DNA of 64,000 nucleotides. It comes from Anaeramoeba ignava BMAN. Lineage: Eukaryota > Protista > Anaeramoebae. Under the pieces are notes generated by a model. The model did not search any database. It saw only the letters and a program-made list of their open reading frames with translations, and was not told where the DNA came from. The first letter of the stretch is position 1; every line of letters starts with the position of its first letter. Shown here piece by piece: positions 35,773 to 60,897 of the stretch. The stretch spans positions 372,001 to 436,000 of the forward strand of contig JAPDFW010000033.1 in assembly GCA_028826165.1 (NCBI GenBank). Reading direction: 5' to 3'. Position numbers and translations under genes: made by a program.

Positions 35773-38700
35773 ATGTATTTCTATAATCAAACTTTACAAA
35801 ATTCAACATCGATTGTGAATTGCATTTGTGGGAATTTTCGAAATCCGAAAATACAAGATATATTAGTTTCACATGGAACAGTATTAGAGCTTTACAAAAT
35901 AGGGGATCAAGGGAATCTTGTGAGCATTTTCAAGTCAGAAATATTTGGGCAAATCCGTTCGATGAAGACGTTTAGATTACCAGGAAGCAGGAAGGATTTT
36001 GTGTTTATTGGTTCTGATAGTGGTGCTATTACTCTTCTTGAATATTCTATTAATAAAAATCGTTTTATTGTTATTCATCAGGAAATATTTGGTAAAATTG
36101 GAAGAAGAAGAGTTGTTCCTGGTCAATTTCTTGCTGTTGATCCTCGTGGAAGAGCTGTTATGATTGGTTAGTATTATTTATATATAAATTATATTTAAAT
36201 TATATTCAATAAATAAATTATATTTAAATTATATTCAATAAATAAATTATATTTAAATTATATTCAATAAATAAATTATTTATAAATTATATTCAATTTA
36301 TAAATAAATTATATTTAAATTATATTCAAATTATAAATTATATATAAATAATATTTAAATTATATTCAAATTATATATAAATTATATTCAAATTATATTC
36401 AAATTATAATTTATATATAAATTATATATAAATTATATATAAATTATAAATAAATTATATTCAAATTATAAACAAATTATATTTAAATTATATTTAAATT
36501 ATATTTAAATTATATATAAATTATATTTAAATTATATTTAAATTATATATAAATTATATTTAAATTATATATAAATTATATTTAAATTATATTTAAATTA
36601 TATTTAAATTATATATAAATTATATTCAAATTATAAATTATAAATAAATTATATTTAAATTATATATAAATTATATTCAAATTATAAATAAATTATATTT
36701 TAAATTATATTTAAATTATATTTAAATTATATTCAAATTATAAATAAATTATATATAAATTATATTTTAAATTATATATAAATTAAAATTAAATTATATT
36801 TAAATTATAAATTATATTTAAATTATATTTTAAATTATAAATTATATTCAAATTATATTCAAATTATTTATAAATTATATTTAAATTATATTCAAATTAT
36901 ATTTAAATTATATATAAATTATATTTAAAATTATATATAAATTATATTCAAATTATATATATAAATTATATTCAATTTATATTTAAATTATATTCAAATT
37001 ATATTCAAATTATATTTAAATTATATTTAAATTATATTTAAATTATATTTAAATTATATATATAAATTATATTCAAATTATATTCAAATTATATTCAATT
37101 TATATTTAAATTATATTCAATTTATATATAAATTATATTCAAATTATAAATAAATTATATATAAATTATATATAAATTATATTCAAATTATAAATAAATT
37201 ATATATAAATTATATATAAATTATATTCAAATTATATTCAAATTATATTTAAATTATATATAAATTATAAATTATAAATAAATTATATTCAAATTATATT
37301 CAAATTATATTCAATTTATATTCAAATTATAAATAAATTATATTTAAATTATATTTAAATTATATTTAAATTATTTATAAATTATATTTAAATTATATTT
37401 AAATTATTTATAAATTATATATAAATTATATTTAAATTATATATAAATTATATTCAAATTATATTTAAATTATAAATAAATTATATTCAAATTATAAATA
37501 AATTATATTTAAATTATATTCAAATTATAAATTATATATAAATTATATATAAATTATATTCAAATTATATTCAAATTATATTCAATTTATATTCAAATTA
37601 TATTCAAATTATATTCAAATTATATTCAAATATTTATATTCAATTTATATTTAAATATTTATCTCATTGAATTAGGTTCTGTTGAAAAATCTCGTATCGT
37701 TTATGTTTTAAGTAGAGATTCTGCAAATAATGTAACTATCACTTCTCCATTAGAAGCTCATAGACCTAAAACAATAATATCTTCAATTTGTGGTGTTGAT
37801 GTTGGATTTGATAACCCAATATTCGCTTGTATTGAAACAGAATATGGAGAAATAGAAAATGATCAAACAGGGGAAGCAGCAAAAAATCCAAAAAAAGTTT
37901 GAATCAATTTAAATTATCTAAAATTATCTTAAATATCTTATTTTATGTTATTAGGAAATTTCTTTTTATGAATTAGATCTTGGATTAAATCATGTTGTTA
38001 GAAAATGGAGTGATTTTATTGAACCAACATCAAATTTATTAATTCCAGGTATTTATAAATATTCATTTTGAATTTATAAATATTTATTTTTATTTTGAAT
38101 TTATAAATATTCATATTTATTTTTATTTTATAAATATTCATTTTTATAATTTTATATTCATTTTTATAATTTTATTTTTAATTTGTATGGAAAGTTCCTG
38201 GAGGAAATTCTGGACCAGGTGGTATTTTAATTTGCTCGGAAAACAAAATCACTTTTAAAAATAAAGATCATGTTGATATTATTGAATATTTCCCAAAAAG
38301 AGAAATGAATGAAGAATTAAAAAGCGTTTTAAATAAAGTGATGACCCAATACAAAAAACAAAATAAAAACAATGAAAATAATGAAAATAATGAAAATGAA
38401 GAAGTCAGTGATAAAGATAATGATGATGATATGGAAGTTGATAACACACTGGATTCTTCTATTGAAATAGAAGATACTTTTATAACATGCTATTCAATGC
38501 ATAAGCAAAAAGGAATGTTTTTTTTTCTTTTGCAAAACCAATTTGGAGATTTATTCAAAGTGACACTAGATTATGATGAAGACGAAGTGAAGAAAATCAA
38601 CATTTCATATTTTGATACAGTTTCAATAGCGGTTGATATGTGTTTGTTGAAAAATGGATTTCTTTTTGTAGCATCTGAATCAGGAAACCATTATTTTTAT

Positions 38701-41662
38701 CAATTTCAAGGAACAGAATGGAATCAAGTGAAATCAATCACAGAAAACGAATCAAAAAACCGGAAGCAACCAAAAACATATCGAATTCACGAATTGCAAA
38801 ATTTAGCATCAATTGATGAAATGGAAAGTATTTCGCCATTGATTTCAGCGAAATTTCTTGATTTGAATAGAGAAGGAACACCTCAATTATATTGTACATG
38901 CGGAAGAGGAGGAAGATCAAGTTTCCGCGTTTTGCGGCATGGATTGTCAGTCCATGAAATTGCGACATCAATTCTGACAGGAACAGTTCCGCATGGTATT
39001 TGGACTATCAAGAGCAATATTGCAGCACAAATTGATAAATATATTGTTATTTCTTATAAAGATTCAACAATGTTTTTGGAAATTGGAGAAAGTGTTGAAG
39101 AAATCACAGAAAAACGTTTCTTGAATTCGGTCTCAACTTTACTTATTGGGTTAATGGAGGATGATTCTATTATTCAAGTTTATCCTCATGGATTCCGTCA
39201 TTCAAATGCAAATGGTCGGATTCGTGAGTGGATTCCTCCATCAAGAAAATCAATTGCAAAATGCACTATGAATTCTTCTCAGTTGGTGATTTATTTAACT
39301 GGTGGTGAATTAATTTATTTTGAGTTGGACGAGACTGGTGATCTTCAAGAGATAAGGAAGATTAATTTTACTGAAGAGATTGTTTGTATGGATATTTCTA
39401 CAGTACCATCTGGGAGAAGATATGCATCATTTTTTGTAAGCAATTTTAAATCAATTTTAAATCAATTTTAAATTAAATATTTAAATCAATTATTTAAATC
39501 AATTTTAAATCAATTATTTAAATTAAATTAAATCAATTATTTAAATTAAATCAAAATTAAATTAAATATTTAAATTAAATCAAATATTTAAATCAAAATT
39601 AAATCAAATATTTAAATTTAAATCAAAATTAAATTTGTAAATAAAGGCAGTTGGAACATATAACAACAACATTCGCATATTCTCTTTAGAATCCGAAAAA
39701 TGTCTCGAAAGTGTTGCACTTCAAATTTTAGATTCAAAACCAGAAAGCGTAATTTTTGTAGAAATGCAATCAACATTTGGAGAAGAAACGGAAACAACAA
39801 TAAACACACTTTTCCTAAACATAGGATTAGATAACGGAATATTTATTCGGTTAGTAGTAGATGAAGTTAACGGAACACTATCAAATTCACGAACAAGATA
39901 TTTAGGAACAAAACCAGTGAAATTATTCCGTGTAAAAAGCGCAGGAGAAAACTCAGTACTTGCGCTATCAAATCGTTCGTGGCTCAGCTATAATTTCCAA
40001 AGCAAATTTTATAACACTCCATTGATTTATTATCCACTTGATTTCGCAGCTCCTTTTTCATCCGAGCATTGCGAAGAAGGAATCGTTGCAATTTCCGAAC
40101 AGACAATGAGAATCATTTATATCGATCGGTTCGGAACAACTTTTAATGAAACATCAACTCCTTTGAAATTAACTCCAAGACATTTTGTTGTTCATCCAAA
40201 TAATCAATGGATAATGATGATCCAATCGGATCGAAATATGCTTTCTGAAACAGAACAAAATCAGATTTGTATGTATGAATTTCGGGATGAAATAGCGCGT
40301 CAAGAAAATAAAAGATCAGGAAATCAAAATTTAAATGAAAATCAAAATTTAAATGAATATCAATATCAAAATGAAAATCAATATCAAAATGAAAATCAAT
40401 ATCAAAATCGAAATTTAAATCAATATCAAAATCAAAATCAATATCAAAATCAATATCAAAATGAAAATGAAAATCAAAATAATGAAGATGAAGATGAAGA
40501 TGAAGATGATGAAGAGGAAGAAAAAAAGCAACTTCTTAACAAACAGGAACAATTCCTCCGTGCGCTTCGTCCTGGAGAGAACAAATGGGCATCTAGTATC
40601 AAGATATATGATATTATCCAGGAAAGCGAGGTGGAGAAATTTGAATTTGGAAATAATGAAAGTGCGATAAGCATTTGCACTTGCAGTTTCCAACAAGGAC
40701 TTTTTATCGTAGTAGGGACTGTAGAAGATCTAATTCTTGCGCCGCGATCATTTGGAAAGGCGTTTCTCTATGTGTTCCAATTAGTGGGGAATGATCCACA
40801 AATGATGGATAACGGAAATCAACGAATCATTGAGTTTATACACAAAACAAAAGTGAATGGGATTCCTTATGCATTGAATGATTTCCACGGGAGATTAATA
40901 GCAGGAATAGGAAATCATCTGTGCATATATGCAATGGGACAGAAGCAGCTTCTGAGGAAATGCATCAACCGAGGATTTCCAACAATGATTTCGCACATTG
41001 AAGTGCAAGGAAACAGAATATTTGCAGCAGATATAGCAGAATCAATACACTATGTGAAATACAACCAGATTGAGAACCAACTCACAATTATCGCGGATGA
41101 CTCGCTTCCTCGGTATGTAACAGCAATGACTGTTCTTGATTACGACACTGTTGCTGTGGGAGATAAATTCGGACAAATTTTTGTGTTGCAAATTCCCGAG
41201 CATATCGAGGATGAGCAAGACATCGAGACTGCAGAGCGGCTGCTGTGGGACAGAGGATATCTCAACGGCGCGCTCAACAAGCTCAACATCATGTGTGAGT
41301 TTCATGTCGGCGAGATTGTCTGCGGATTGCAGAAGACAGTCATGAGCGCCGTTTCTTGTCTGTTCTATACAACAATGATGGGTTCTATTGGTGTTTTGAT
41401 GCCGTTTGTTTCTAGAGATGATGTCGACTTTTTCTCCCTTCTTGAGTCGTTGATTCGCAAGGAATTACCTCCTCTTTGTGGTAATGACCATCTTAAGTTC
41501 CGTTCCTCTTTTTTTCCTGTAAAGGCCGTTATTGATGGTGATTTATGTGAAATGTTTTCTTTGCTTTCTTCAAAAAAACAATTGCAAATTGCAAATAAAC
41601 TTGAAAGATCTGTTGGTGAAGTTTTTAAAAAGTTGGAAGATTTTAAGAATAGGATTTTGTAA
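35773..41662 (+). CDS. SF3B3: Splicing factor 3B subunit 3 (Rse1/SAP130); exons 35773-36166, 37676-37896, 37955-38048, 38195-39435, 39647-41662
   Basis: [77 protein letters not shown]. Confidence 0.97.
36175..37660. repeat. Intronic (AAATTATATTT/C)n 11-mer array
   Basis: Visible tandem repeat in SF3B3 intron 1. Confidence 0.93.
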
Positions 41663-41829: not shown

Positions 41830-44630
41830 AATTTATTAATAATTTATAAATAATTTAATTTAAACAAATTTATTAATAATTTAATTTAAAAAAAATAGAA
41901 TAAATTTATAAATAATTTAATTTAAAAAAAATGAAATAAATTTATAAATAATTTAATTTAAAAAAATGGAATAAATTTATTAATAATTTAATTTAATAAT
42001 TTATTTTAAAAAAATGGAATAAATTTATTAATAATTTAATTTAAAAAAAGTGGAATAAATTTATTAATAATTTAATTTAAAAATGGAATAAATTTATTAA
42101 TAATTTAATTTAAAAAAAATAGAATAAATTTATAAATAATTTAATTTTAAAAGATGGAATAAATTTATTAATAATTTAATTTAAAAAAATGGAATAAATT
42201 TATTAATAATTTAATTTTAAAAATGGAATAAATTTATTAATAATTTAATTTAAAAAATGGAATAAATTTATTAATAATTTAATTTAAAAAAAGTGGAATA
42301 AATTTATTAAATAATTTAATTTAAAAAATTGGAATAAATTTATAAATAATTTAATTTAAAAAAAAATGAAATAAATTTATAAATAATTTAATTTAAAAAA
42401 AGTGGAATAAATTTATTAATAATTTAATTTAAAAAAAGTGGAATAAATTTATAAATAATTTAATTTAAAAAAATGGAATAAATTTATAAATAATTTAATT
42501 TAAAAAAATGGAATAAATTTATAAATAATTTAATTTAAAAAATAGAATAAATTTATAAATAATTTAATTTAAAAAAATGGAATAAATTTATTAATAATTT
42601 AATTTTAAAAAAATGGAATAAATTTATTAAATAATTTAATTTAAAAAAAGTGGAATAAATTTATAAATAATTTAATTTAAAAAAAGTGGAATAAATTTAT
42701 AAATAATTTAATTTAAAAAAAAGTGGAATAAATTTATAAATAATTTAATTTAAAAAGTAGAATAAATTTATTAATAATTTAATTTAAAAAAAATGAAATA
42801 AATTTATTAAATAATTTAATTTAAAAAAATGGAATAAATTTATAAATAATTTAATTTAAAAAAATGGAATAAATTTATTAATATTTTATTTTAAAAAAAT
42901 GGAATAAATTTATAAATAATTTAATTTAAAAAAATAGGAATAAATTTATAAATAATTTAATTTAAAAAAAATGGAATAAATTTATTAAATAATTTAATTT
43001 AAAAAAAATGGAATAAATTTATAAATAATTTAATTTAAAAATGGAATAAATTTATTAATAATTTAATTTAAAAAAATGGAATAAATTTATTAAATAATTT
43101 AATTTTAAAAAAATGGAATAAATTTATAAATAATTTAATTTAAAAATGGAATAAATTTATTAATAATTTAATTTAAAAAAATGGAATAAATTTATAAATA
43201 TTTTAATTTAAAAATAGAATAAATTTATAAATAATTTAATTTAAAAAAATGGAATAAATTTATTAATATTTTAATTTAAAAAAAATGGAATAAATTTATA
43301 AATAATTTATTTTAAAAAAAATGGAATAAATTTATAAATAATTTAATTAAAAATGGAATAAATTTATTAATAATTTTATTTTAAAAAGTGGAATAAATTT
43401 ATTAAATAATTTAATTTTAAAAAAATGGAATAAATTTATTAATAATTTATTTTAAAAAAGTGGAATAAATTTATAAATAATTTTAATTTAAAAAGTGGAA
43501 TAAATTTATTAATAATTTAATTTTTAAAAAATGGAATAAATTTATTAAATAATTTAATTTAAAAAATGGAAATAAATTTATAAATAATTTAATTTAAAAA
43601 AATGGAATAAATTTATTAATAATTTAATTTAAAAAATAGGAATAAATTTATAAATAATTTAATTTAAAAAAAATGGAATAAATTTATTAAATAATTTAAT
43701 TTTAAAAAAATGGAATAAATTTATTAATAATTCATTTAAAAAATGGAATAAATTTATAAATAATTTAATTTAAAAAAATGGAATAAATTTATAAATAATT
43801 TAATTTAAAAAAAGTGGAATAAATTTATAAATAATTTAATTTAAAAAAAATGGAATAAATTTATTAATAATTTAATTTAAAAAATAAAATAAATTTATAA
43901 ATAATTTTAATTTAAAAAAATGGAATAAATTTATAAATAATTTAATTTTAAAAAAAGTGGAATAAATTTATAAATAATTTTATTTTAAAAAATGGAATAA
44001 ATTTATAAATAATTTAATTTAAAAAAGTGGAATAAATTTATAAATAATTTAATTTAATAAAAAATGGAATAAATTTATTAATAATTTAATTTAAAAAAAA
44101 TGGAATAAATTTATTAATAATTTAATTTAAAAAAAATGGAATAAATTTATTAATAATTTAATTTAAAAAAATGGAATAAATTTATAAATAATTTAATTTT
44201 AAAAAAATAGGAATAAATTTATTAATAATTTAATTTAAAAAAAGTGGAATAAATTTATTAAATAATTTAATTTAAAAAGTGGAATAAATTTATAAATATT
44301 TTAATTTAAAAAAAATGGAATAAATTTATAAATAATTTAATTTAAAAAAAATGGAATAAATTTATTAATAATTCAATTTAAAAAAAATGGAATAAATTTA
44401 TTAAATAATTTAATTTAAAAAAAATGGAATAAATTTATTAAATAATTTAATTTTAAAAAAATGGAATAAATTTATTAATAATTTAATTTTAAAAATGGAA
44501 TAAATTTATAAATAATTTAATTTAAAAAAATGGAATAAATTTATAAATAATTTATTTTAAAAAAAATGGAATAAATTTATAAATAATTTTATTTTAATAA
44601 AGTGGAATAAATTTATAAATAATTTATTAA
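41830..44630. repeat. Intergenic minisatellite, ~38-41 bp unit A(n)TGGAATAAATTTAT(A/T)AATAATTTAATTT, roughly 70 copies
   Basis: Regular recurrence of TGGAATAAATTTAT across ~2.8 kb. Confidence 0.95.
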
Positions 44631-44875
44631 TAATTTATTAATAATTTTAATTAAAAAAAATGATTAAAGATTTTAATTTAAATTTTTATTTTAATTTGAT
44701 ATTTTTAAATATATATATGAATTATTATTTTAATATTTTTTAATATTTATTAAAAAAAATAAAAGAAAAAAAAAAGCAAAAAAAATTTTTTTAATTTTTT
44801 TTTTTCATTTTTTTTTCAATTCTTATTAAAAAATAAACAAAGAAAAAACCAAAAATTTTAATAATAATTTAATTA

Positions 44876-47800
44876 ATGGCAAAATTAGCAGATCAAGAGT
44901 GGATTAGAGTACAAAAAAAAGTAAGTATTTTCTTTTAAAAAATTAAAAATAAAAATTTAAAATAAAAATTTAAATTATAATAAATAGACTTTTACTAAAT
45001 GGGTTAATTCACATCTTTCCAAACGAAAACTTCAAATTGAAGAATTAGACAAAGATTTTGAAGATGGATTAAAATTAATTGCTCTTTTGGAAATTATTGG
45101 AGATGAAAAATTATCAAGATACAATAAGAATCCAAGACTTAGAATTCAAAAAATTGAAAATGTGAAAGTAGCTTTAAACTTTATTGAGAGTCGAGGAGTA
45201 AAACTAGCATCAATTGGAGCAGAAGGTAAAACAAACAAAAAAAAAGAAGAAAAAAGCAAAAAAATTTCAATAATAAAAAAATAATTAATAGTAATATTTA
45301 TATTTATATTTATATTTATATTTATAATTATATTTATATTTATATTTATATTTATATTTATATTTATATTTATATTTATATTTATATTTATATTTATAAT
45401 TATATTTATATTTATAATTATATTTATATTTATATTTATATTTATATTTATATTTATATTTATATTTATATTTATATTTATATTTATATTTATATTTATA
45501 TTTATATTTATATTTATATTTATATTTATATTTATATTTATATTTATATTTATATTTATATTTTATATTTATAATTTTATTTTATATTTTATTTTATATT
45601 TTATATTTTATATTTATATTTATATTTATATTTATATTTATATATTTATATTTATATTTATATTTATATTTATATTTATATTTATATTTATATTTATATT
45701 TATATTTATATTTTATATTTTATATTTATTATATTTATATTTATATTTATAATTTATATTTATATTTATATTTATATTTATATTTATATTTTATATTTAT
45801 ATTTATATTTATATTTATATTTTATATTTATATTTTATATTTATATTTTATATTTTTATATTTTTTATTTTATATATTTTTTAAATATTTTTAAATATTT
45901 TTTTTAAATATTTTAAATATTTTTAAATATTGTTTTAAATATTTTTAAATATTGTTTAAATATTTTTAAATATTTTTTAAATATTTTTAAATATTTTTAA
46001 ATATTGTTTAAATATTGTTTAAATATTGTTTAAATATTGTTTAAATATTGTTTATATATTGTTCAAATATTGTTTAAATATTGTTTAAATATTGTTTAAA
46101 TATTGTTTAAATATTTTTTATTTCTTGAAATATAAAGATATCGTCGATGGAAACCTTAAATTGATCTTGGGAGCAATCTGGACAGTCATTCTTAGATTCG
46201 CAATCGCAGACATCAGTATCGAACAACTAACAGCCAAAGAAGCACTTCTCCTTTGGTGCCAACGAAAAACCGAAGGATACCGAGATGTTGAGGTGAAAAA
46301 CTTTACATGGAGTTGGCAAGACGGACTTGCATTCAACGCATTGATCCACCGACACCGACCAGATCTTTTGAACTACGACTCACTTCAAAAAGAGAACAAA
46401 GGGGACAATCTAAATCAAGCATTTGATATCGCAGAGAAGGAACTCGGGATTGCGAAATTGCTTGACGCAGAGGATATGGTGGATATAAAACCCGATGAAA
46501 GATCAGTGATGACATATCTTTCAGAATATTTCAAAGTATTTTCAAAAGGACAAAAGGCAGAAGTTGCCGGAAGAAGAATAGGAAAACTCGCGCAATTAAC
46601 ACAACAAAACGACGAGTTAAAAGAAAGTTATGTAACAAAAGCAAGCGGATTGAAGGATTGGATCGTTGCAAAGACCGAAGAAATGAACGAGCGAGAATTT
46701 CCAAATTCGTTAGAAGGAATGCAAAAAAAAATGGATGAATTCAACGAATATCGAACGGACGAGAAGCCACCAAAAACGGCGGAAAAACTAGAACTTGAAG
46801 CGTTGATGAATTCGATCAAAATCAAGCTTGCGTCAAATAACCGACCAACTTATGTACCTCCTGAAGGACTTAGTGTCGAAGAATTGAACCAACTTTGGGA
46901 AGATCTTAATAAAGCAGAAGTTGCGCGATTAGAGGCTCTACAGAACGAGCTCGGGCGACAAAAACAACTGCGTAAACTTGTTGCGCAATTCTGGAAGAAG
47001 GTCCAACGTCTCGAGAACTGGGCTGGCGAGAAGGAAGCTTATCTCCAACAAGAGGAACACATCGAAACACTCGCAATGGCTCAACTTCAGCTCAAAATGC
47101 TCGACAACTACCGCAACGAATACGAGCAATCCAAGACAAGTCTCGCTGAATGCCTCGATTTGGGACAGAAAATCATCGATCTTGATTACGCAGAAAAGGA
47201 AGACGTTGGAAATAAAATGGAAGAACTCCAAAACCGTTGGGAGACAATCGTTGGTCTTGAAAAAACGAAACAGAAAATCCTCGAAGCCGAACAGGCAAAA
47301 CAGCAGAAAATGGAGGATCTCAGATTGCTCTTCAGCAAGAAGGCGCAAGATTATAACCGTTGGCACAAAAATCAAGTGGAAATTGCAAACGATCTCCTTT
47401 TCGGCGAGGATCTCCCCTCAGTCGAGGAATTTGCTGAGAAACTCACAAGCGACGAACAAGGCATCACAGAGGGTTCCACCGAGAAGCGAGATGAGCTTGT
47501 GGCGATCGACGATGAACTACGCGGTCTCGGATCAAAAGACAACAAGTACTCTGTGTTGACAATCAAAGACATCCACACAAAACACGATCAACTGATTGCA
47601 CTTCTCGCTCAGCGACGACAAGCCTATGACAAAGAGCTCGCCAAGCAGAAGGCTATGGAAGAAAAACGGCTCGAATTTGCCGCGCTTGTTGACACATTCA
47701 TCGAGCTTCTGGACACATTGAAATCAAAAATTTCCTCGATCACAGGCGATCCACAGGAATGCATCAATGAGACAAATACCGTCTACGATAATGCAAGTGA

Positions 47801-49106
47801 AGTCAACGCCCAGCTTGCGCGTCTGAAGGAGGTCGATGACGAACAGCACGCCATGCAGATCCGGGATAACAAGCACGCGAAGATGTCCTATGAATCATGC
47901 GTTAAAAAAGCAGACAAATTAGACAAGTGGGTATCTAATTTCCTTTCTGCATTACAGGAGGAAATCGACTTCACAATCCGCAAGAACGCGCAAGACAAAG
48001 AATGGGCAGAAAAGGATCGCATCGAGAATATGCGACTTGACTATGCAACACGAGCCCGTGAATTGCGACTGTGGATCGATTCATCAGAGGATATTATAAC
48101 GGAACCGTTATTCGCAGAATCAGTTGACGAAGTTCGCGCCGCAATTTCCGACACAGACTCAGTGCGGGAAAACATGGAATCCAAACAGGAAGAGCTCAAC
48201 AGCCTCGATACCCTCCACACTCAACTTCTAGACCTCGGCGTTACAGATTTTCTCGGTTATCCCTTTGACACAGTAAGTCAAAAGTGGCAGGATTTGATCG
48301 CTCTCCTCGATTCCAGAGACGCCGAACTCAAAACAGAACTCGACACACAATCGCGCAACGAGCAGATCTGCAGATCCTTCGCAACAAACGCTGAATCCCT
48401 TAACTCCTTCCTTACAGAACAACACAAACTCGCCTCAGCTGAACTTTCTGGTGATCTCAATTCTCAACTGAAAGATGCTCAGGAACAACTCCACTTGGTA
48501 GAAAAACGCGCCTCCAATGTCACAGACCTCAAGAACATCCAAGCACAAATTGACGCCCAACAAATCCATAACAATCCATTTACTTCCTTGACTTTAACAG
48601 ATGTCATCGTGTTTTTCGACCAAGTTCTTGATCTCGTTTCAAAAAAAGCAAACATGATCGAAAATGAAATTCTCATTAAAGAAGGAAGCAAAGTCTCTTC
48701 TTCTCAGCTCAACGACTTCAAAAAAATGTTCAACACTTTTGACAAAGACAAGAAAGGCAGTCTTTATGACTATGAGTTTTCCGCCGTTCTCAATTCACTT
48801 GGTGATGATCTTTCTGACCAAGAACTCAAGGATGTTTTCCAAAAATATGACACTGACAAGAACGGTACAATTGAATTTGACGAGTTTGTCCACTTTATGA
48901 CTGTTCGTCATGAAGATTCTGACACTCGTGAACAATCTCTTGAGAGTTGGCGTATTATTGCTAGTGGCAAGGACTATGTTACCCAAAATGATATGCAAGT
49001 TGCTGGCATGGATACTCAAACTGTTTCCTATTTGGTTCAAAATATGCCCAAGAAAGATGATGGTTTTGATTATGAAGCTTGGGTTGATGACGTTTATAAC
49101 CGATAA
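44876..49106 (+). CDS. Alpha-actinin (~1083 aa); exons 44876-44920, 44988-45225, 46138-49106
   Basis: CH1/CH2 (QKKTFTKWVNSHL, DIVDGNLKLILGAIWTVILRFAI, AKEALLLWCQRKT, SWQDGLAFNALIHRHRPDL, KPDERSVMTY), spectrin-repeat rod, C-terminal EF hands (FDKDKKG, YDTDKNGTIEFDEF). Confidence 0.95.
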
Positions 49107-53473: not shown

Positions 53474-56400
53474 TCACCAAGACTCTTCAAGATAACGTTG
53501 CTCATCTTGAATCTTTCGATATGCTTTATCACCTAAAATTTGAGCAACAGTTTTGCGAACATCATTTCCCATAGACTTGCTACCACAAACTAAAACACAA
53601 CCATCATTTGAAATAACATCATTTAAAAGTGAAGAATTTTGATTCAGCAAATGTTGAACATAAACCTTTTCCTTTTGATCACGAGAAAAGGCGAAAAATG
53701 CTTGAGTAATAATTCCCTTTTCAATAAAATCTTGAATTTCTTTTTGGAAAATAAAATCAAATTTGGAAGTTCGACATCCAAAAAACAAATATAAAGCCTT
53801 GCGCTTGTTCTTTGGCACCAATTCCAATTGCATCATCATCCCAAGAAACGGAGCAATCCCAGTCCCTGCCGCAATTAAAATATTGGGCTTCTCAAGGGAT
53901 AATTTAAAAGGACTTTTCTCAACAAAAATTTTGACTTGAGAATCTTTTTGTTTTGACTGCAAAAAATTGGAGCACACACCTTTTTCCACAACCTGAACAG
54001 CAAGATCCAAATATTGCTCGCCATCCTTTTGGATCGAAGCAATAGAATAGTATCTTGGATTAAGACGTTGTATATTTTCAATGAAAAATTCCAACGGAAG
54101 TTGAACTGATTGAAAAGTCTCAAAAACATCAACAATTCCACGTTTGTGAGTGATCATCCATTCCTCATAAGCCTGGCGATCCTGTGACAGTTTTATCAAG
54201 TTTTGCCTATCATTCTCACCGTTGCAGAACACAGAGGCAATAATGGAAAGCACATCGGGTGGGACAGGACCAGATATATCGCAATAACAAGAAAAATATT
54301 CTCCGATGCTCATGGGTTTGGGAACTTTTTTCGTTGACGGTTTAACATCGAAAACGCGTTGGAAATCAAATCCGCCGCGTGAACACAATCTCTTGACAAG
54401 TTGCGGATCGTTTTCAGGAAGAACACCTGCAAGATCCCCTCCTTGAAATTGAAATCCAGAGTCTTTGACATCAAGTCGAATCCATCTGCATGATCTCCCA
54501 GGCTCGCGTCCTTCGCCAAGTAGCTCTGTGTTGAATATGACTCTTGCGCTGAATGGATTCCGGGAGTTGTGAATGCTCGATATATTCGCATTGTTCTCAA
54601 CTTCCATTTGATTGGTATTGTTTTCGTCTTTGAAAAAAATCTGGAACATTGAAGATTGTTTTTTTTGGATTGAATTTTTTTGCGAAATTGTTGGGAATCC
54701 ACCAAGTTTTCCGCAAAACTGCTCGATCAAACTTTGTGTCCAAGTGTCGAAGGTTTTATCTATTGAGTTATCTGCCTCATCTCCTTTGCCGAGAGGAGCA
54801 ATACGCTCTGCGCCCAAGTTCTGGAAACATGAATCAATCGTGATTGCAGCTCTTTGATAACGACCACCGTAAATAGAACTTCCCAGCCCGAATACAGCGA
54901 ATCGTGTCTGGGAGAGAATGTGAGAAGAAAGACCCGAGGTAGCAGATATGAGGTAATTGACAAAAACACGAGCATTATCGGGTGGTTCACCTTCGCCATG
55001 AGTTGACGTGATCACGAGAACAATTGTTTGAGAAGGAAGAAACCCTGGATCGAAATCTTCCATATCACGCACCTTGATGTCGAACGCAGACCCGATGATG
55101 TTATGCGTGGTGAGTGTGCGATAGAGTCTTCTGGAAAGTTCCTCTGAAGTTCCTGTTTGAGTACCGAATAAAATCAAAATTCTGTGTTCTTGATCGAATA
55201 AAGACCCAAAAAACGGATCACGTTCGGAAACTTTTTTCTCTCCTTTTTTCCCATACACAACTGCTGCAAGAGCCTCTGGATTCTGCGGTTTTTCAGCGAG
55301 CGGATTCTTATACTCATCTGACCATATTCCGGGAATCTTTGTTCCACATTTTGAACAACAACCTTTCACAATTCCTTCTGTTCTTGTGTTGTATCCCAAC
55401 CGTTGGATAAGTGTTGCTTTGCAGTTTGGACAGTACGTTGCTGTGTGTTTATCTGATGAAACATTTCCTGCGTAAATGAAATTTAATCCTTCTTCTTTTC
55501 CTATTTTGTATGCTTTTATAAGTGTTGATAATGGTGTTGATCTTCGTGATTTCATTTTATATGCCCCGTAGAATGCACTAATGTGCCAGGGAATATTTGG
55601 ATCAATTTTAACAAGAAATTTCGCAATATCTCGCATTTCTTCTTCTGAGTCGTTTTCATCTGGAATAAAAAGGGTTGTCTTTTTATTTATTTTAATTTTA
55701 ATTTTTTATCCGATTTTGATTTTAATTTTAATTTTAATTTTTTATCCGATTTTGATTTTAAATTTTAATTATAATTTTGATTTTTTATCCGATTTTGATT
55801 TTAATTTTAATTTTAATTTTAATTTTGATTTTTATTTTAATTTTAATTTTAATTTTAATTTTAATTTTAATTTTAATTTTAATTTTAATTTTAATTTTAA
55901 TTTTAATTTTAATTTTAATTTTAATTTTAATTTTAATTTTAATTTTATTTTAATTTTAATTTTAATTTTAATTTTAATTTTAATTTTAATTTTAATTTTA
56001 ATTTTAATTTTAATTTTTATCCGATTTTGATTTTAATTTTGATTTTAATTTTTATTTTAATTATAATTTTAATTTTAATTTTTAATTTTAATTTTAATTT
56101 TAATTTTAATTTTAATTTTAATTTTAATTTTTAATTATAATTTTAATTTTGATTTTAATTTTAATTTTTATTTTAATTTTTAATTTTAAATTTAATTTTA
56201 ATTTTGATTTTAATTTTAATTTTTATTTTAATTTTTATCCGATTTTGATTTTAATTTTGATTTTAATTTTGATTTTGATTTTGAGTTTTGATTTTGATTT
56301 TAATTTTAATTTTAATTTTAATTTTAATTTTAATTTTTATTTTAATTTTAATTTTAATTTTAATTTTAATTTTAATTATAATTTTAATTTATTTTGATTT

Positions 56401-58804
56401 TAAATTTTAATTTTAATTTATTTTTGATTTTAAATTTTAATTTTAATTTTAATTATAATTTTAATTATAATTTTGATTTTTAATTTTAATTTTAATTTTA
56501 ATTTTAATTTTAATTTTAATTATAATTTTAATTTTAATTTTAATTTTAATTTTAATTTTAATTTTGATTTTGATTTTAATTATAATTTTAATTATAATTT
56601 TGATTTAAATTTTAAATTTTAATTTTAATTATAATTTTGATTTTTTATCCGATTTTTATTTATTTTATTTTAATTTTTTATCCGATTTTGATTTTAATTT
56701 TAATTTTAATTATAATTTTTATCTCAAAATAAACTTACAACTTCAACCCAAACACCAGCATTTCTAAAACGTTCAATATTCTTGAGAACAGGAGCTAAAC
56801 GAACACCAGATAATTCTTGATAAAATTTATTACGAAAAGACTTAAGATCAATATTAATAGCATCAATATAAGGAGCAATTAACTCAACACATTCAGGGGA
56901 CATATATCCATTTGAAACATAAACATTCTTTATTCCATGTTTTTGTGCTAATTTTGCTGTATCAAGTGCATATTCAGTGAAAATAGTTGGTTCATTATAT
57001 GTATATGCAATTGATTTACATCCAAATTTTAAACATTTTTCAACTATTTGTTTTGGTGATAATTTTGTTCCTAATTCTAAATCTTCAATATCAGTTCCAT
57101 CTCTTGTTGCCATAGAAATATCCCAATTTTGACAAAATTTGCATGTGAAATTACATCCAACAGTTCCAAGTGAAAAAGCTTCAGTTCCTGCATAAAAATG
57201 ATGAAGCTTAAAATGATCCAATTTTAAATTTAAATTAATTCAATTTTATATCAATTTTATAACAATTTTATATCAATTTTATATCAATTTTAAATTAATT
57301 TTATATCAATTTTATATCAATTTTATATCAATTTTAATTCAATTTTAATTCAATTTTATATCAATTTTATATCAATTTTATATTAATTTTAAATTAATTT
57401 TATATCAATTTTATATCAATTTTAAATCAATTTTAAATCAATTCTATATCAATTTTAAATCAATTTTATATCAATTTTAAATCAATTTTAAGTCAATTTT
57501 AAATCAATTTTAAATCAATTTTATATCAATTTTATATCAATTTTATATTAATTTTATATCAATTTTATATCAATTTTATATCAATTTTAAATCAATTTTA
57601 TATCAATTTTATATCAATTTTAAATCAATTTTTATATCAATTTTATATTAATTTTATATCAATTTTTATATTAATTTTATATTAATTTTAAATCAATTTT
57701 ATATCAATTTTATATTAATTTTAAATCAATTTTATATCAATTTTAAATCAATTTTATATCAATTTTAAATCAATTTTATATCAATTTTAAATCAATTTTA
57801 TATCAATTTTAAATCAATTTTAAATTAATTTTAAATTAATTTTATATTAATTTTATATCAATTTTAAATCAATTTTTATATCAATTTTATATCAATTTTA
57901 TATCAATTTTATATCAATTTTATAACAATTTTATATCAATTTTATATCAATTTTAAATTAATTTTATATCAATTTTTATATCAATTTTATATCAATTTTA
58001 TATCAATTTTATATCAATTTTTATATCAATTTTATATCAATTTTATATCAATTTTATATTAATTTTTAAATCAATTTTAAATCAATTTTATATTAATTTT
58101 AAATCAATTTTATATCAATTTTATATCAATTTTAATTCAATTTTAATTCAATTTTATATCAATTTTATATTAATTTTAAATTAATTTTATATCAATTTTA
58201 TTTCAATTTTATATCAATTTTATATTAATTTTATATCAATTTTATATCAATTTTATATTAATTTTATATCAATTTTATATCAATTTTATATCAATTTTAT
58301 ATCAATTTTATATTAATTTTAAATCAATTTTATATCAATTTTATATCAATTTTATATCAATTTTATATTAATTTTAATTTTATATCAATTTTAAATAAAT
58401 TTTATATCAATTTTATATCAATTTTAAATCAATTTTATATTAATTTTAATTCAATTTTATATCAATTTTATATTAATTTTATATCAATTTTATATTAATT
58501 TTATATCAATTTTATATCAATTCTAAATCAATTTTATATCAATTTTATATCAATTTTAAATTAATTTTAAATCAATTTTATATTAAAAATCAAGATTCAA
58601 CTATCCAAAAATTACTGGTTTTTTCTCAATAGGATCAATATTAACTGCTATTGCTCTTCCATAAACTTCTAAAAATAATTTTCCATTTCGATTTCTTCTA
58701 ACTCCACATTCACCAAATTCATTAGGTGAAATGACACATCTATGATAACAACAAGTACACTTAACTTTTTTGTTATCTAATTTCTCATATAAAATTGCTT
58801 CCAT
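53474..58804 (-). CDS. amrS: AmmeMemoRadiSam-system radical SAM enzyme fused to a diflavin (FMN/FAD/NADPH) reductase; exons 58804-58616, 57206-56739, 55678-53474 (~953 aa)
   Basis: AmrS motifs VKCTCCYHRC..GECGVR, IDPIEKKPLHHF, GCNFTCKFCQNWDIS (CxxxCxxC), IAYTYNEPTI, VSNGY, NIDLKSF, WVEVTTL.IP.END, PWHISAF, FIYAGNV, TYCPNC..CSKCG.KIPGIW; then LFGTQTGTSE, STHGEGEPPDN, FGLGSS.Y, PRYYSIAS, AGTGIAPF, FFGCR, AFSR, VYVQH, VCG, terminal W. Confidence 0.92.
57225..58590. repeat. Intronic (ATCAATTTTAT/A)n 11-mer array
   Basis: Visible tandem repeat in intron 1 of the radical SAM gene. Confidence 0.95.
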
Positions 58805-59112: not shown

Positions 59113-60897
59113 TTAATTTTGATTATTAAATTTATTAATTAATAAATCAAATAAATTTGGATTTGTTTGATTTAATTGAAAATAATCAATTCCTCTTTCT
59201 AATTCATCGATTATTTCTTGTGTAATTTGAATTTCTTCTTTAATTTGATTTGAATAAATCCAATATTCAAATATTTGAAATGATTTATTACTTAATTCAC
59301 TATAATCTGTAACTTTATTAGATTTATCTTCAGTTACAGATAAAAACATTCCTCGATATAATTCACTTCTCATTATTAATATTAATTTGGGAAATTTATA
59401 TTGTTTTTCTTTTCTTTCAATTATAAAATCTTTTTCATTTTCTTTTTCATTTTCATTTAAATAAATTCTTTTCATTGTTTCTTCAATTTTTTCATTTGAA
59501 TTTATAATTTCTTTAATTTCAGAATATAATTTTGGATTTATTTTGGAATTGTTTGAATAAATCATTTCAAATATTTGATTTGTTTCTTTAATTGATTTTT
59601 TTGAAATAATTTCTTTAAGTTTTTCAATTTGATTTTGATTTAATCTATATTTCAATATTAATTTATGAGCTTCAATTATTTCTCCATTTTCGGTTTTAAA
59701 TGAAATATCACAAAATTCTTTTATTCTAAATAATTTTATCAAATCTTCTTCAAGATTGGAAAAAGAAGGAGGAGAATAATAAAGAAATGATTTTTGATAT
59801 CCACAAGAAATATGATAATTTGAAATATTTTCATTAAATCTTAATTTAGGAAGTTCAATTTGAATTGGAATTGATTGATCATTTGTATTTCCAGTTCCTA
59901 AATGACCATATTCATTATCTCCAAATACTATAAATTTCCCTTTAGAAGTTAAAATCAAAGTATGATCAGTTCCAAGAGAAAAATCAATGATATTATCATT
60001 TTCTTCAAATAAAGATGATTTGATTTCAGTAAATTCATAAATATTCCGGAATTTTTGGCGAAATCCATTATATCGATAATCTCCACATGAATAAAGTTTT
60101 CTTTTTGGATTTTCATCTTCATCTTCATTTTCAATCAACATTATTGAATGAGAAGCTCCAGTTTTAATATCAATTATTTTGCCTTTTGGAATATTTTGAA
60201 TTTTGGTTAATTTTTGGATTGTTGTTTCTCTTATTCTTGATTTTCCTAATCCAAGTTGAGCAAATTCATTCCATCCGCATCCGAATAATTCTTGATTTGA
60301 ATTTAAAAGAAAAATAGAAGCTGAAGTACCTCCTGAAAATATTTTAGAAACATTTTTCATCATTAAAATTGGTTTTTCTGTTCGTTTAAGTGTTTCAGAA
60401 TCAAAGCCAAGTTGACCAAATTGATTTAAACCAATTCCATAAACATTTTGATTTGAAGTTAATAAGTAAATTGAATAAGCACCAGAAACAATATCTTTAA
60501 TTATTCTATCATTTATATCTTCAATTAATGATGAAATATTGATAAATTCATTTGGATTTATTAGATTAATATTATTTCCTTTTGCAAATACATTTCCTTC
60601 TATTGTTAAAATAGCTTCATTTTGATGACCAACAGTTACTTTTTGAATATTTTCTTCAATTTGGATTTTTGAAGGATTTTGATTTGAATCATTTTCATCT
60701 GAATATTTTATTGCTTTTCCATTTTTAAAAAGGAAAATTGTTGAAAAATAACTTGTTGAAATTTGTTTAATTTGTTTTTCATTTTCATTTTCATTTTCAT
60801 TTTCAAATTTAAATTGAATTGGTTTTGTTATTTCATTTGTTTTATTTTTTAAAAGTTTTTGAAATTGATTTAAACCAAAAAATAAACAATCATTCAT
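59113..60897 (-). CDS. RCC1-repeat + tandem BTB-like domain protein, intronless
   Basis: RCC1 repeats (YGIGLNQFGQLG, FGCGWNEFAQLGLG, GTDHTLILT, FGDNEYGHLGTG) and BTB motifs KEFCD..EAHKLILKYR, LILIMRSELYRGMF. Confidence 0.9.
   Translation of the reverse strand: MNDCLFFGLNQFQKLLKNKTNEITKPIQFKFENENENENEKQIKQISTSYFSTIFLFKNGKAIKYSDENDSNQNPSKIQIEENIQKVTVGHQNEAILTIEGNVFAKGNNINLINPNEFINISSLIEDINDRIIKDIVSGAYSIYLLTSNQNVYGIGLNQFGQLGFDSETLKRTEKPILMMKNVSKIFSGGTSASIFLLNSNQELFGCGWNEFAQLGLGKSRIRETTIQKLTKIQNIPKGKIIDIKTGASHSIMLIENEDEDENPKRKLYSCGDYRYNGFRQKFRNIYEFTEIKSSLFEENDNIIDFSLGTDHTLILTSKGKFIVFGDNEYGHLGTGNTNDQSIPIQIELPKLRFNENISNYHISCGYQKSFLYYSPPSFSNLEEDLIKLFRIKEFCDISFKTENGEIIEAHKLILKYRLNQNQIEKLKEIISKKSIKETNQIFEMIYSNNSKINPKLYSEIKEIINSNEKIEETMKRIYLNENEKENEKDFIIERKEKQYKFPKLILIMRSELYRGMFLSVTEDKSNKVTDYSELSNKSFQIFEYWIYSNQIKEEIQITQEIIDELERGIDYFQLNQTNPNLFDLLINKFNNQN

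What the first reader, a model, noticed from the sequence alone, without database searches (positions are those of the whole stretch)
53474..58804. Prokaryote-type AmmeMemoRadiSam radical SAM enzyme fused to its own NADPH diflavin reductase in an intron-containing eukaryotic gene
Seen: three exons (189+468+2205 nt) joined by two phase-0 GT-AG introns give ~953 aa. The first ~345 aa carry the full AmrS signature set (N-terminal Cys cluster, DPIEKKP, CxxxCxxC-QN, YTYNEP, C-terminal CxxC..CxxC). After a ~40-aa linker come flavodoxin, FAD-binding and NADPH-binding modules. The fusion junction lies inside one uninterrupted exon, so it is not a splicing-model artefact. Known: AmrS (TIGR04337) is a bacterial/archaeal enzyme that partners with AMMECR1 (AmrA) and Memo (AmrB) proteins, with unknown substrate and a proposed role in nucleic-acid modification. 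Eukaryotes generally keep AMMECR1 and MEMO1 but not AmrS. Radical SAM enzymes need a low-potential electron, normally from separate flavodoxin/flavodoxin reductase; Tyw1 fuses only the flavodoxin. Inference: a laterally acquired or anciently retained AmrS was domesticated (intron gain) and made self-sufficient, NADPH->FAD->FMN->[4Fe-4S], like P450-BM3 or NOS. It may reconstitute the three-component system in an anaerobic eukaryote. I know of no description of this architecture.
Basis: partly seen in the sequence, partly recalled or inferred. Interest (0 to 1): 0.93.

Follow-up and report, generated by a model that had tools for sequence, protein, structure and literature searches.

The report
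Radical SAM enzyme with built-in reductase
An oxygen-avoiding amoeba (Anaeramoeba ignava) has a real, transcribed, intron-containing gene that joins a radical-making enzyme of unknown job (AmrS) to a complete NADPH-driven electron supply, a design found in no paper searched, which could make this enigmatic enzyme easy to assay.

Summary
A three-exon minus-strand gene (58804-58616, 57206-56739, 55678-53474; two phase-0 GT-AG introns) encodes an AmrS radical SAM module (TIGR04337 profile 4-336, contiguous across the exons). A ~40-residue linker inside exon 3 joins it to FMN, FAD and NADPH modules. The genome is Anaeramoeba ignava. An independent transcriptome ORF (P0001, 99.7% identical) spans the exon 2/3 junction and the whole fusion.

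It is one of four fused paralogs in this genome, with another in A. flamelloides. Among 1.84 billion representative proteins, only Anaeramoeba proteins align over both halves.

- The reductase sits with eukaryotic CPR-like sequences, not bacterial CysJ.
- AmrS is not absent from eukaryotes. Kipferlia, Barthelona, Blastocystis, Paratrimastix and parabasalids have it.
- Parabasalids (Tritrichomonas) carry an AmrS-flavodoxin fusion, a partial precedent.

The genome also holds four AMMECR1 and three Memo genes.

Best reading (about 0.7): a self-sufficient radical SAM enzyme, NADPH to FAD to FMN to [4Fe-4S]. Activity and substrate are untested. I found no description in the papers searched; databases call these proteins "flavodoxin family protein".

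The scan had already noted two paralogs on other pieces of this genome (s1-692258, s1-707750).

The parts
58616..58804 (-). Exon 1 (63 aa). It holds the start codon, the N-terminal four-Cys motif and DPIEKKP, and covers AmrS profile positions 4-61.
   Evidence: Sequence read, with an in-frame TAA at 58813-58811 upstream of the ATG. TIGR04337 46.8 bits. Conserved Cys and DPxEKKP columns present.
57207..58615 (-). Intron 1, phase 0, GT...AG, 1409 nt. It is almost entirely an 11-nt tandem array.
   Evidence: Tandem Repeats Finder gives 57240-58583, period 11, 122 copies. The same intron position occurs in the paralogs on C104 and C60.
56739..57206 (-). Exon 2 (156 aa), the radical SAM core. It carries CNFTCKFC-QN (57155-57132), TYNEP and DLK, and covers AmrS profile positions 62-212.
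   Evidence: Pfam Radical_SAM 79.1 bits. TIGR04337 163.8 bits against 43.7 for PFL activase. Conserved columns present.
55679..56738 (-). Intron 2, phase 0, GT...AG, 1060 nt. It is almost entirely a 6-nt (ATTTTA) tandem array.
   Evidence: Removal of this intron is shown by transcript ORF P0001, which reads ...WVEV|TTLF.... The position is shared with the C60 paralog.
55313..55678 (-). Start of exon 3: the C-terminal third of AmrS (profile 213-336), including CxxC...CxxC.
   Evidence: TIGR04337 107.9 bits on exon 3 residues 1-122. Conserved Cys columns present.
55184..55312 (-). Linker of about 43 residues between AmrS and the FMN domain, inside the same exon.
   Evidence: Open frame with no stop. 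Transcript P0001 is continuous here. In the AlphaFold2 model this stretch has pLDDT about 69-83 and one short helix.
54740..55174 (-). FMN (flavodoxin-like) domain.
   Evidence: Pfam Flavodoxin_1 96.5 bits. The alignment to human CPR conserves the TQTGT phosphate loop, the GEGEPPDN loop and the FGLG..Y loop.
53981..54565 (-). Connecting and FAD-binding domain.
   Evidence: Pfam FAD_binding_1 131.6 bits. RYYSIAS is identical to CPR. The hinge just upstream (about 54584-54694) is the only stretch with pLDDT below 50.
53552..53878 (-). NADPH-binding domain.
   Evidence: Pfam NAD_binding_1 51.2 bits. GTGIAPF, GCR, AFSRDQ.EKVYVQH and VCG align with the corresponding CPR stretches. The reading of these as NADPH 2'-phosphate contacts, and of the Trp that ends the protein as the FAD-stacking Trp of CPR, is from my own knowledge; the printed alignment stops before the C-terminus.
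53474..53476 (-). Stop codon.

Best explanation
The gene encodes a soluble, probably cytosolic, self-sufficient radical SAM enzyme. An AmrS-type catalytic domain sits on the same chain as a CPR-like diflavin reductase, joined by a ~40-residue linker; a flexible hinge follows the FMN domain. The proposed electron path is NADPH to FAD (hydride), then FAD to FMN (single electrons). The FMN domain then swings on that hinge to deliver an electron to the CxxxCxxC [4Fe-4S] cluster, which cleaves SAM to the 5'-deoxyadenosyl radical.

The enzyme would act in the still uncharacterised AmrS/AMMECR1/Memo pathway, for which an RNA base modification has been predicted. The partner proteins are encoded elsewhere in the genome.

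Shown: the architecture, its transcription, and conservation of all cofactor and cluster motifs. Also shown: the paralog family and the presence of partner genes. Inferred: electron flow to the cluster, NADPH specificity, cytosolic location, and the link to AMMECR1/Memo and RNA.
For: Architecture and motifs. A transcript spans the fusion.

The fusion has been kept under selection. There are four fused paralogs in A. ignava, and A. flamelloides P0003 groups with the C60 copy, so the duplications predate the split of the two species. Three full-length copies score 344-357 bits against the TIGR04337 cut-off of 220.

An AmrS-FMN-domain fusion also exists in parabasalid-type proteins, so wiring a flavodoxin-type donor to AmrS is found in a second lineage.

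The AlphaFold2 model of P0001 is confident (pLDDT 89, pTM 0.78). Only the FMN/FAD hinge is disordered, as expected for a swinging FMN domain.

There is no N-terminal extension: a stop lies three codons upstream of the ATG and the start aligns with bacterial AmrS.

Partner genes are present: four AMMECR1 and three Memo. Metagenomic AmrS-AMMECR1-Memo triple fusions tie the three functions together. The RNA-modification prediction is in PMC2034487.

From my own knowledge: flavodoxin plus NADPH:flavodoxin reductase is the physiological reductant of bacterial radical SAM enzymes, and diflavin reductases are fusions of those two modules.
Against: From my own knowledge, the FMN hydroquinone of CPR-type reductases (about -270 mV in mammalian CPR) is a weaker reductant than bacterial flavodoxin. 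Reduction of a roughly -450 to -500 mV cluster would be uphill unless the potentials are tuned.

The docking test of the FMN domain on AmrS was not run by the tool.

One paralog (P0005, C88) keeps the reductase but has lost Cys1 of CxxxCxxC. The reductase may therefore have a use independent of SAM cleavage.

The AMMECR1 and Memo genes are unlinked and are of the ordinary archaeal/eukaryotic type (TIGR00296 scores best), which nearly all eukaryotes have. Their presence is weak evidence for a joint pathway.
Confidence: 0.7

Rival explanations
1. The reductase half serves some other electron acceptor, such as a small molecule, oxygen or xenobiotic detoxification, or another protein. On this view the AmrS half acts mainly as an Fe-S relay or scaffold, as in other anaerobe fusions of Fe-S enzymes to diflavin reductases. 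SAM cleavage would not be driven in cis.
For: Paralog P0005 keeps an intact-looking reductase although the radical SAM cluster site and DPxEKKP are gone. AmrS has two further four-Cys motifs that could hold metal centres.
Against: The window copy and three other copies (P0002, P0003, P0004) keep every catalytic AmrS residue and score far above the family cut-off. That is not expected of a mere scaffold. The parabasalid relatives carry only the FMN domain, which is the part that would touch AmrS.
Confidence: 0.15
2. The radical SAM half is a glycyl-radical-enzyme activase (of the PFL-activating type) made self-sufficient for anaerobic energy metabolism. It would not be an AmrS.
For: AmrS and PFL activases are related. 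JGI pipelines routinely name AmrS 'pyruvate formate lyase activating enzyme'. The only PDB sequence matches are to PFL-AE, and they are weak.
Against: On exon 2, TIGR04337 scores 163.8 bits against 43.7 for PFLA. The AmrS profile is covered end to end across the exons. The AmrS-specific N- and C-terminal Cys motifs and DPxEKKP are present. Paralogs score 344-357 bits against a cut-off of 220.
Confidence: 0.04
3. The fusion is an artefact: a misassembly, bacterial contamination, or a gene-model merge.
For: None was found. The only gap is that no read-level data could be laid on the region.
Against: The junction lies inside one uninterrupted exon. An independent transcriptome ORF covers it, with 2 differences in 734 residues. 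Four paralogs on four contigs, plus one in a second species, share the architecture and intron positions. The flanking genes are typical eukaryotic genes in 15-20% GC DNA.
Confidence: 0.01

Closest known systems
Prokaryotic AmrS (AmmeMemoRadiSam system radical SAM enzyme, TIGR04337)
   Same: The catalytic domain is the same, 51-57% identical (P0002 domain) to archaeal and bacterial members from Nitrosopumilus, Woesearchaeota and CPR bacteria. All conserved Cys motifs and signature residues are present.
   Different: Prokaryotic members stand alone at about 340 aa, or are fused to AMMECR1 and/or Memo. None in the 1.84-billion-protein representative set carries a reductase. The window gene has introns and a 570-residue reductase tail.
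Parabasalid-type AmrS-flavodoxin fusion proteins (e.g. Tritrichomonas foetus P0365, 535 aa; P0127, P0121 and relatives)
   Same: These are AmrS followed by a linker and a diflavin-type FMN domain, in the same order. They fall in the same eukaryote-dominated AmrS clade.
   Different: They end after the FMN domain, with no FAD or NADPH modules, so they need a separate reductase. Whether the two fusions share one origin is unresolved: SH-aLRT 97 under LG+G4 with two such rows, but unresolved under the mixture model and in the FMN-domain tree.
Eukaryotic Tyw1 (flavodoxin-like domain plus radical SAM domain)
   Same: It is a radical SAM enzyme of RNA modification with an FMN domain in cis (PMC9186531, listed).
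   Different: In Tyw1 the flavodoxin is N-terminal, the radical SAM family is different, and there is no FAD/NADPH module. UniRef mislabels the Tritrichomonas AmrS-flavodoxin protein as Tyw1, although it scores 304 bits on TIGR04337.
Self-sufficient CPR fusions (P450 BM3, nitric oxide synthase) and, in anaerobic protists, pyruvate:NADP+ oxidoreductase and hydrogenase-CysJ fusions
   Same: A CPR/CysJ-type FMN-FAD-NADPH reductase is fused to the enzyme it reduces. BM3 and NOS reductase domains are among the PDB matches. The protist examples are from my own knowledge.
   Different: In those enzymes the acceptor is haem or a non-SAM Fe-S enzyme. No papers searched describe a radical SAM enzyme as the acceptor.
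Bacterial flavodoxin / NADPH:flavodoxin reductase system
   Same: It uses the same cofactor chain (NADPH, FAD, FMN) that reduces radical SAM clusters in bacteria (from my own knowledge).
   Different: There it consists of two separate proteins acting in trans. Here both are on the same chain as the enzyme.

Membership tests
AmrS (TIGR04337) | Profile HMM score above the curated cut-off (220 bits) over the full profile length | tested here: met
   The exons were searched apart and not joined. They score 46.8 + 163.8 + 107.9 bits on profile positions 4-61, 62-212 and 213-336. This is a rough sum of 318 bits. Full-length paralogs P0002, P0003 and P0004 score 349, 357 and 344 bits.
AmrS (TIGR04337) | Radical SAM CxxxCxxC cluster motif plus the family's N-terminal and C-terminal four-Cys motifs and DPxEKKP | tested here: met
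   All are present in the window exons, checked against columns conserved in at least 85% of 149 AmrS domains.
AmrS (TIGR04337) | Co-occurrence with AMMECR1 (AmrA) and Memo (AmrB) homologs | tested here: met
   The same genome holds four AMMECR1 and three Memo loci. They are unlinked and of the general archaeal/eukaryotic type, so this is a weak criterion in a eukaryote.
AmrS (TIGR04337) | SAM cleavage activity and a defined substrate | not testable with these tools
   No member is characterised in the papers searched.
Diflavin reductase (CPR/CysJ type) | Flavodoxin_1, FAD_binding_1 and NAD_binding_1 in that order, each above the Pfam cut-off | tested here: met
   96.5, 131.6 and 51.2 bits. 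One alignment covers 552 residues of human CPR at 234 bits.
Diflavin reductase (CPR/CysJ type) | FMN, FAD and NADPH binding residues | tested here: met
   TQTGT, GEGEPPDN, FGLG..Y, RYYSIAS, GTGIAPF, GCR, SR..K.Y and VCG are conserved in the alignment to CPR. A Trp is the last residue of the protein, though the printed alignment ends before it. One difference: His replaces the Tyr of the first FMN loop.
Bacterial CysJ (TIGR01931) | Score above the equivalog cut-off (668 bits) and placement inside the CysJ clade | tested here: not met
   The score is 270 bits against a cut-off of 668. Bacterial CysJ forms a separate 100/100 clade that excludes the fused reductases.
PFL-activating enzyme (TIGR02493) | Score above the cut-off (231.75 bits) | tested here: not met
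   43.7 bits on exon 2.

The most novel reading that the evidence does not exclude
This is the first natural radical SAM enzyme that carries its entire NADPH-to-cluster electron chain in one polypeptide. It also marks a complete AmrS/AMMECR1/Memo pathway that is old in eukaryotes, kept by anaerobic lineages and stripped of its oxygen-sensitive radical SAM member in aerobic ones. If so, the unknown biochemical role of the human disease-linked proteins AMMECR1 and MEMO1 could be approached through an NADPH-driven, reductant-free assay of the Anaeramoeba proteins.
Probability: 0.4. Interest if true: 0.85.

Novelty: new variant of a known kind. Interest (0 to 1): 0.72.

Why it matters
Radical SAM enzymes are usually assayed with artificial reductants, because their physiological electron donors are separate and often unknown. 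A natural NADPH-fuelled, single-chain version would be a convenient tool and a design template.

AmrS, AMMECR1 and Memo form a widespread three-gene system whose chemistry is unknown, although AMMECR1 and MEMO1 are linked to human disease. A eukaryote with all three parts offers a tractable entry point, because the radical SAM part has its own electron supply.

The distribution is also of evolutionary interest. AmrS occurs in several anaerobic protist lineages and is fused to an FMN domain in parabasalids and to a full reductase in Anaeramoeba. This suggests a stepwise solution to supplying low-potential electrons in the cytosol of anaerobic eukaryotes.

Tried and rejected
- **Joined protein.** Exons were searched apart by reference. 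Database proteins P0001 (this gene's partial transcript ORF) and P0002 (a full-length paralog) served as stand-ins.
- **RNA reads.** There is no read-level evidence for intron 1 or for coverage across the linker.
- **Docking test.** It gives no verdict either way.
- **Careful AmrS tree.** The careful IQ-TREE search of 83 AmrS domains did not finish in three 300-s runs. Only the quick PMSF tree is reported.
- **FMN-domain tree.** It could not tell whether the parabasalid FMN domain and the Anaeramoeba FMN domain share one fusion event, because of long branches and an unresolved backbone.
- **Burroughs et al. 2019.** The JBC paper on Memo systems is not held in the library. What I say of it is from memory.
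- **Rejected readings.** PFL activase is rejected on scores. Bacterial contamination is rejected on introns, context and paralogs. The Blastocystis ST4 654-aa model with Ribosomal_L1 is not another fusion type; it is probably a merged gene model.
- **Gene linkage.** The AMMECR1 and Memo loci lie on other contigs. The one Memo locus that shares a contig with an AmrS copy (C60) is about 1.2 Mb from it.


Full report
**What is there.** The region lies in very AT-rich DNA (window GC mostly 8-20%, exon 3 about 35%). On the minus strand I read three exons with canonical borders:
- Exon 1, 58804-58616. An in-frame TAA lies three codons upstream of the ATG.
- Intron 1, 58615-57207 (GTAATT...AAG).
- Exon 2, 57206-56739.
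- Intron 2, 56738-55679 (GTAAGT...AAG).
- Exon 3, 55678-53474.

Both introns are phase 0. They consist almost wholly of tandem arrays: an 11-nt unit repeated 122 times and ATTTTA repeated 172 times.

Each was searched by reference.

**Domain content.** NCBIfam TIGR04337 (AmmeMemoRadiSam system radical SAM enzyme, AmrS) matches the three exons on profile positions 4-61, 62-212 and 213-336, with 46.8, 163.8 and 107.9 bits. The pieces abut to the residue, which validates both splice sites at the protein level. The next-best radical SAM family on exon 2, PFL activase, scores 43.7 bits.

Exon 3 continues in the same frame through a ~43-residue linker into three further domains, all above the Pfam cut-offs:

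| Domain | Exon 3 residues | Bits |
|---|---|---|
| Flavodoxin_1 | 169-313 | 96.5 |
| FAD_binding_1 | 372-566 | 131.6 |
| NAD_binding_1 | 601-709 | 51.2 |

I aligned each exon separately to 149 AmrS domains. Every column conserved in at least 85% of the family is matched in the window gene, apart from one Pro-to-Ala and one Pro-to-Gly change. The matched features are the N-terminal C..C...C....C, DPxEKKP, CxxxCxxC-QN, TYxEP, DLK and the C-terminal CxxC...CxxC.

The reductase aligns over 552 residues with human NADPH-cytochrome P450 reductase at 234 bits. It conserves the FMN loops, RYYSIAS (FAD), and GTGIAPF, GCR, SR..K.Y and VCG (NADPH). A Trp is the last residue of the protein; the printed alignment ends before it.

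**Organism and expression.** The best protein match is a 789-aa ORF from the EukProt transcriptome of Anaeramoeba ignava (P0001).
- It matches exon 3 at 99.7%, with two substitutions.
- It reads straight across the exon 2/exon 3 junction (...WVEV|TTLF...) and through the linker and reductase.
- It is 5'-truncated and starts at an internal Met of exon 2, so intron 1 of this copy has no transcript evidence.

Other large ORFs in the window are ordinary eukaryotic genes: alpha-actinin, RSE1/DDB1-like, NSUN5, bZIP, a kinase and RCC1-BTB. Contamination is therefore excluded.

**A gene family, not a one-off.** The genome holds four AmrS loci (C24 = this window, C104, C60, C88). The reductase half finds the same four loci as its best matches, plus one stand-alone diflavin reductase on C113.
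- NCBI models P0002 (C104, 951 aa) and P0004 (C60, 952 aa), transcript P0005 (C88, 961 aa) and A. flamelloides P0003 (982 aa) all have the full architecture.
- The intron after DPIEKKP is shared by the window, C104 and C60 copies. The intron after WVEV is shared by the window and C60 copies.
- P0003 groups with the C60 copy (SH-aLRT 93), so the duplications predate the split of the two species.
- P0002, P0003 and P0004 score 344-357 bits on TIGR04337 against a cut-off of 220.
- P0005 scores 200 bits. It has lost the first Cys of CxxxCxxC and the DPxEKKP motif.

**How widespread is the architecture?** A full HMMER scan of 1.84 billion representative proteins with P0002 found only Anaeramoeba proteins aligned over both halves.

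The next hits, P0121 (559 aa) and P0127 (520 aa), are AmrS plus a flavodoxin domain only. Both ORFs end in a stop after the FMN domain. A search with the FMN part of P0127 found ten more AmrS-flavodoxin proteins. Nine are 513-539 aa and one is a 420-aa entry. One of them is from Tritrichomonas foetus (P0365), which NCBI names 'flavodoxin family protein' and UniRef names Tyw1. P0365 scores 304 bits on TIGR04337. Its FMN domain best matches the FMN domains of NDOR1 and CPR.

Other long AmrS proteins in the scan are AmrS-AMMECR1-Memo triple fusions or AmrS-Memo fusions from metagenomes. These underline the functional link among the three families.

**AmrS in other eukaryotes.** Stand-alone AmrS genes occur in Blastocystis, Kipferlia bialata, Barthelona sp. 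PCE and Paratrimastix pyriformis. One also lies on a contig of an unnamed flagellate, next to a radial-spoke protein gene. All the named ones score above the family cut-off.

In a quick LG+G4 tree of 149 domains, the Anaeramoeba clade joined P0121 and P0127 (SH-aLRT 97), and then Blastocystis, Kipferlia and Barthelona (94).

In a quick LG+C20 PMSF tree of 83 domains, a 19-row clade (92) holds all the eukaryotic rows except Paratrimastix, with its internal order unresolved. The careful search did not finish.

By raw identity, the Anaeramoeba AmrS domain is 51-57% identical to archaeal and bacterial AmrS.

I read this as an old AmrS lineage in anaerobic protists. Vertical descent versus eukaryote-to-eukaryote transfer is undecided.

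**Origin of the reductase.** In a careful tree of the reductase part:
- The five fused Anaeramoeba reductases form one clade (100/99).
- Bacterial CysJ forms a separate clade (100/100).
- The fused reductases sit on the side of eukaryotic CPR-like proteins, together with the genome's own C113 reductase.

The nearest non-fused relatives are eukaryotic transcriptome proteins. The NCBIfam 'cysJ' label is far below its cut-off (270 versus 668 bits). NCBIfam is built for annotating bacterial and archaeal genomes, which probably explains why no CPR-type model outscored it.

**Partners.** The genome has four AMMECR1 loci and three Memo loci (a weak fourth match sits 2 kb from one of them on C57), all unlinked to the AmrS genes. 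They classify best as TIGR00296 and TIGR04336. That is the general archaeal/eukaryotic type that most eukaryotes possess, though most have a single copy (from my own knowledge). The multiplicity parallels the four AmrS copies.

**Mechanism.** The most likely reading is a self-sufficient radical SAM enzyme. NADPH reduces FAD, FAD reduces FMN, and the FMN domain passes single electrons to the SAM-binding [4Fe-4S] cluster.

The AlphaFold2 model of P0001 supports the moving-domain part of this. It is confident overall (pLDDT 89, pTM 0.78) and shows only the FMN/FAD hinge as disordered.

This copies in cis the bacterial flavodoxin/flavodoxin-reductase route (from my own knowledge). It also parallels P450 BM3 and NOS.

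Weak points:
- There is no biochemistry.
- The FMN potential is unknown.
- The docking test was not run.
- One paralog keeps the reductase without a cluster site.

The pathway's substrate is unknown. An RNA base modification was predicted from gene context (PMC2034487).

**Literature.** None of the ten full-text searches returned a paper describing a radical SAM enzyme fused to a diflavin reductase, AmrS in protists, or these Anaeramoeba proteins. The terms covered Anaeramoeba with radical SAM or flavodoxin, AmmeMemoRadiSam, AMMECR1 with radical SAM, radical SAM with diflavin, radical SAM with flavodoxin and Trichomonas, and AmrS. I also checked a 2026 Anaeramoeba pumila preprint directly, and it does not mention them. 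Subscription papers are not covered.

**Earlier scan notes.** Two notes on other pieces of this genome describe the same family. s1-692258 covers the inactive-looking copy and s1-707750 covers another paralog. My own tests agree with them.

**Verdict.** This is a new variant of known kinds (AmrS, and self-sufficient CPR fusions), undescribed in the accessible literature, and of good interest to radical SAM enzymology and to the AMMECR1/MEMO1 problem.

Noticed in passing
G000:C88:123500-129500 (L039); protein P0005: This paralog keeps the full reductase. Its AmrS half has Arg in place of the first Cys of CxxxCxxC, has lost DPxEKKP, QN and DLK, and scores 200 bits, below the 220 cut-off. It looks like a catalytically dead radical SAM module on a live reductase.
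   Followed up: partly
window 55689-56719 and 57240-58583: Both introns consist almost entirely of one tandem array each: ATTTTA repeated about 172 times, and an 11-nt unit repeated about 122 times. Read on the opposite strand, the arrays give long NFNF/ILIL pseudo-ORFs.
   Followed up: partly
G000 contigs C73, C93, C83, C13 (L001-L004); C1, C60, C57 (L005-L008): There are four AMMECR1 and three Memo loci in one genome, matching the four AmrS copies. Most eukaryotes have one of each (from my own knowledge). Pairing between particular paralogs was not explored.
   Followed up: partly
P0365 (Tritrichomonas foetus) and P0359-P0369, P0121, P0127; loci L021, L022: This is a family of 513-559 aa AmrS-flavodoxin fusion proteins, one named from a parabasalid. 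UniRef labels the Tritrichomonas protein as Tyw1, which the TIGR04337 score (304 bits) contradicts.
   Followed up: partly
P0294 (Blastocystis sp. subtype 4, 654 aa): This gene model joins a Ribosomal_L1 domain to AmrS. Other Blastocystis models of the same gene are 348-366 aa, so it is probably a merged gene model.
   Followed up: no
L041 (Logan SRR31929897 contig, 56.9 kb): A stand-alone AmrS (P0129) lies among closely spaced called genes next to Radial_spoke_3, phospholipase B and an amino-acid transporter. It belongs to an unnamed flagellate in the same AmrS clade.
   Followed up: no
G000:C113:63000-67500 (L040): The genome's only stand-alone full diflavin reductase (a 616-aa open frame) lies beside an actin gene. 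It is about 34% identical to the fused reductases.
   Followed up: partly
window 42001-46000: This stretch has 6-7% GC and extreme GC skew (0.98 and 0.42 in 2-kb bins). It is presumably simple repeats between the RSE1/DDB1-like gene and the alpha-actinin gene.
   Followed up: no
window 38305-41662: An RSE1/DDB1/CPSF1-family gene is split over at least two long ORFs (38305-39471 and 39764-41662). An alpha-actinin-like gene (CH, spectrin repeats, EF-hands) lies at 46092-49106, and an RCC1-BTB gene at 59113-60897, directly upstream of the AmrS fusion gene.
   Followed up: no
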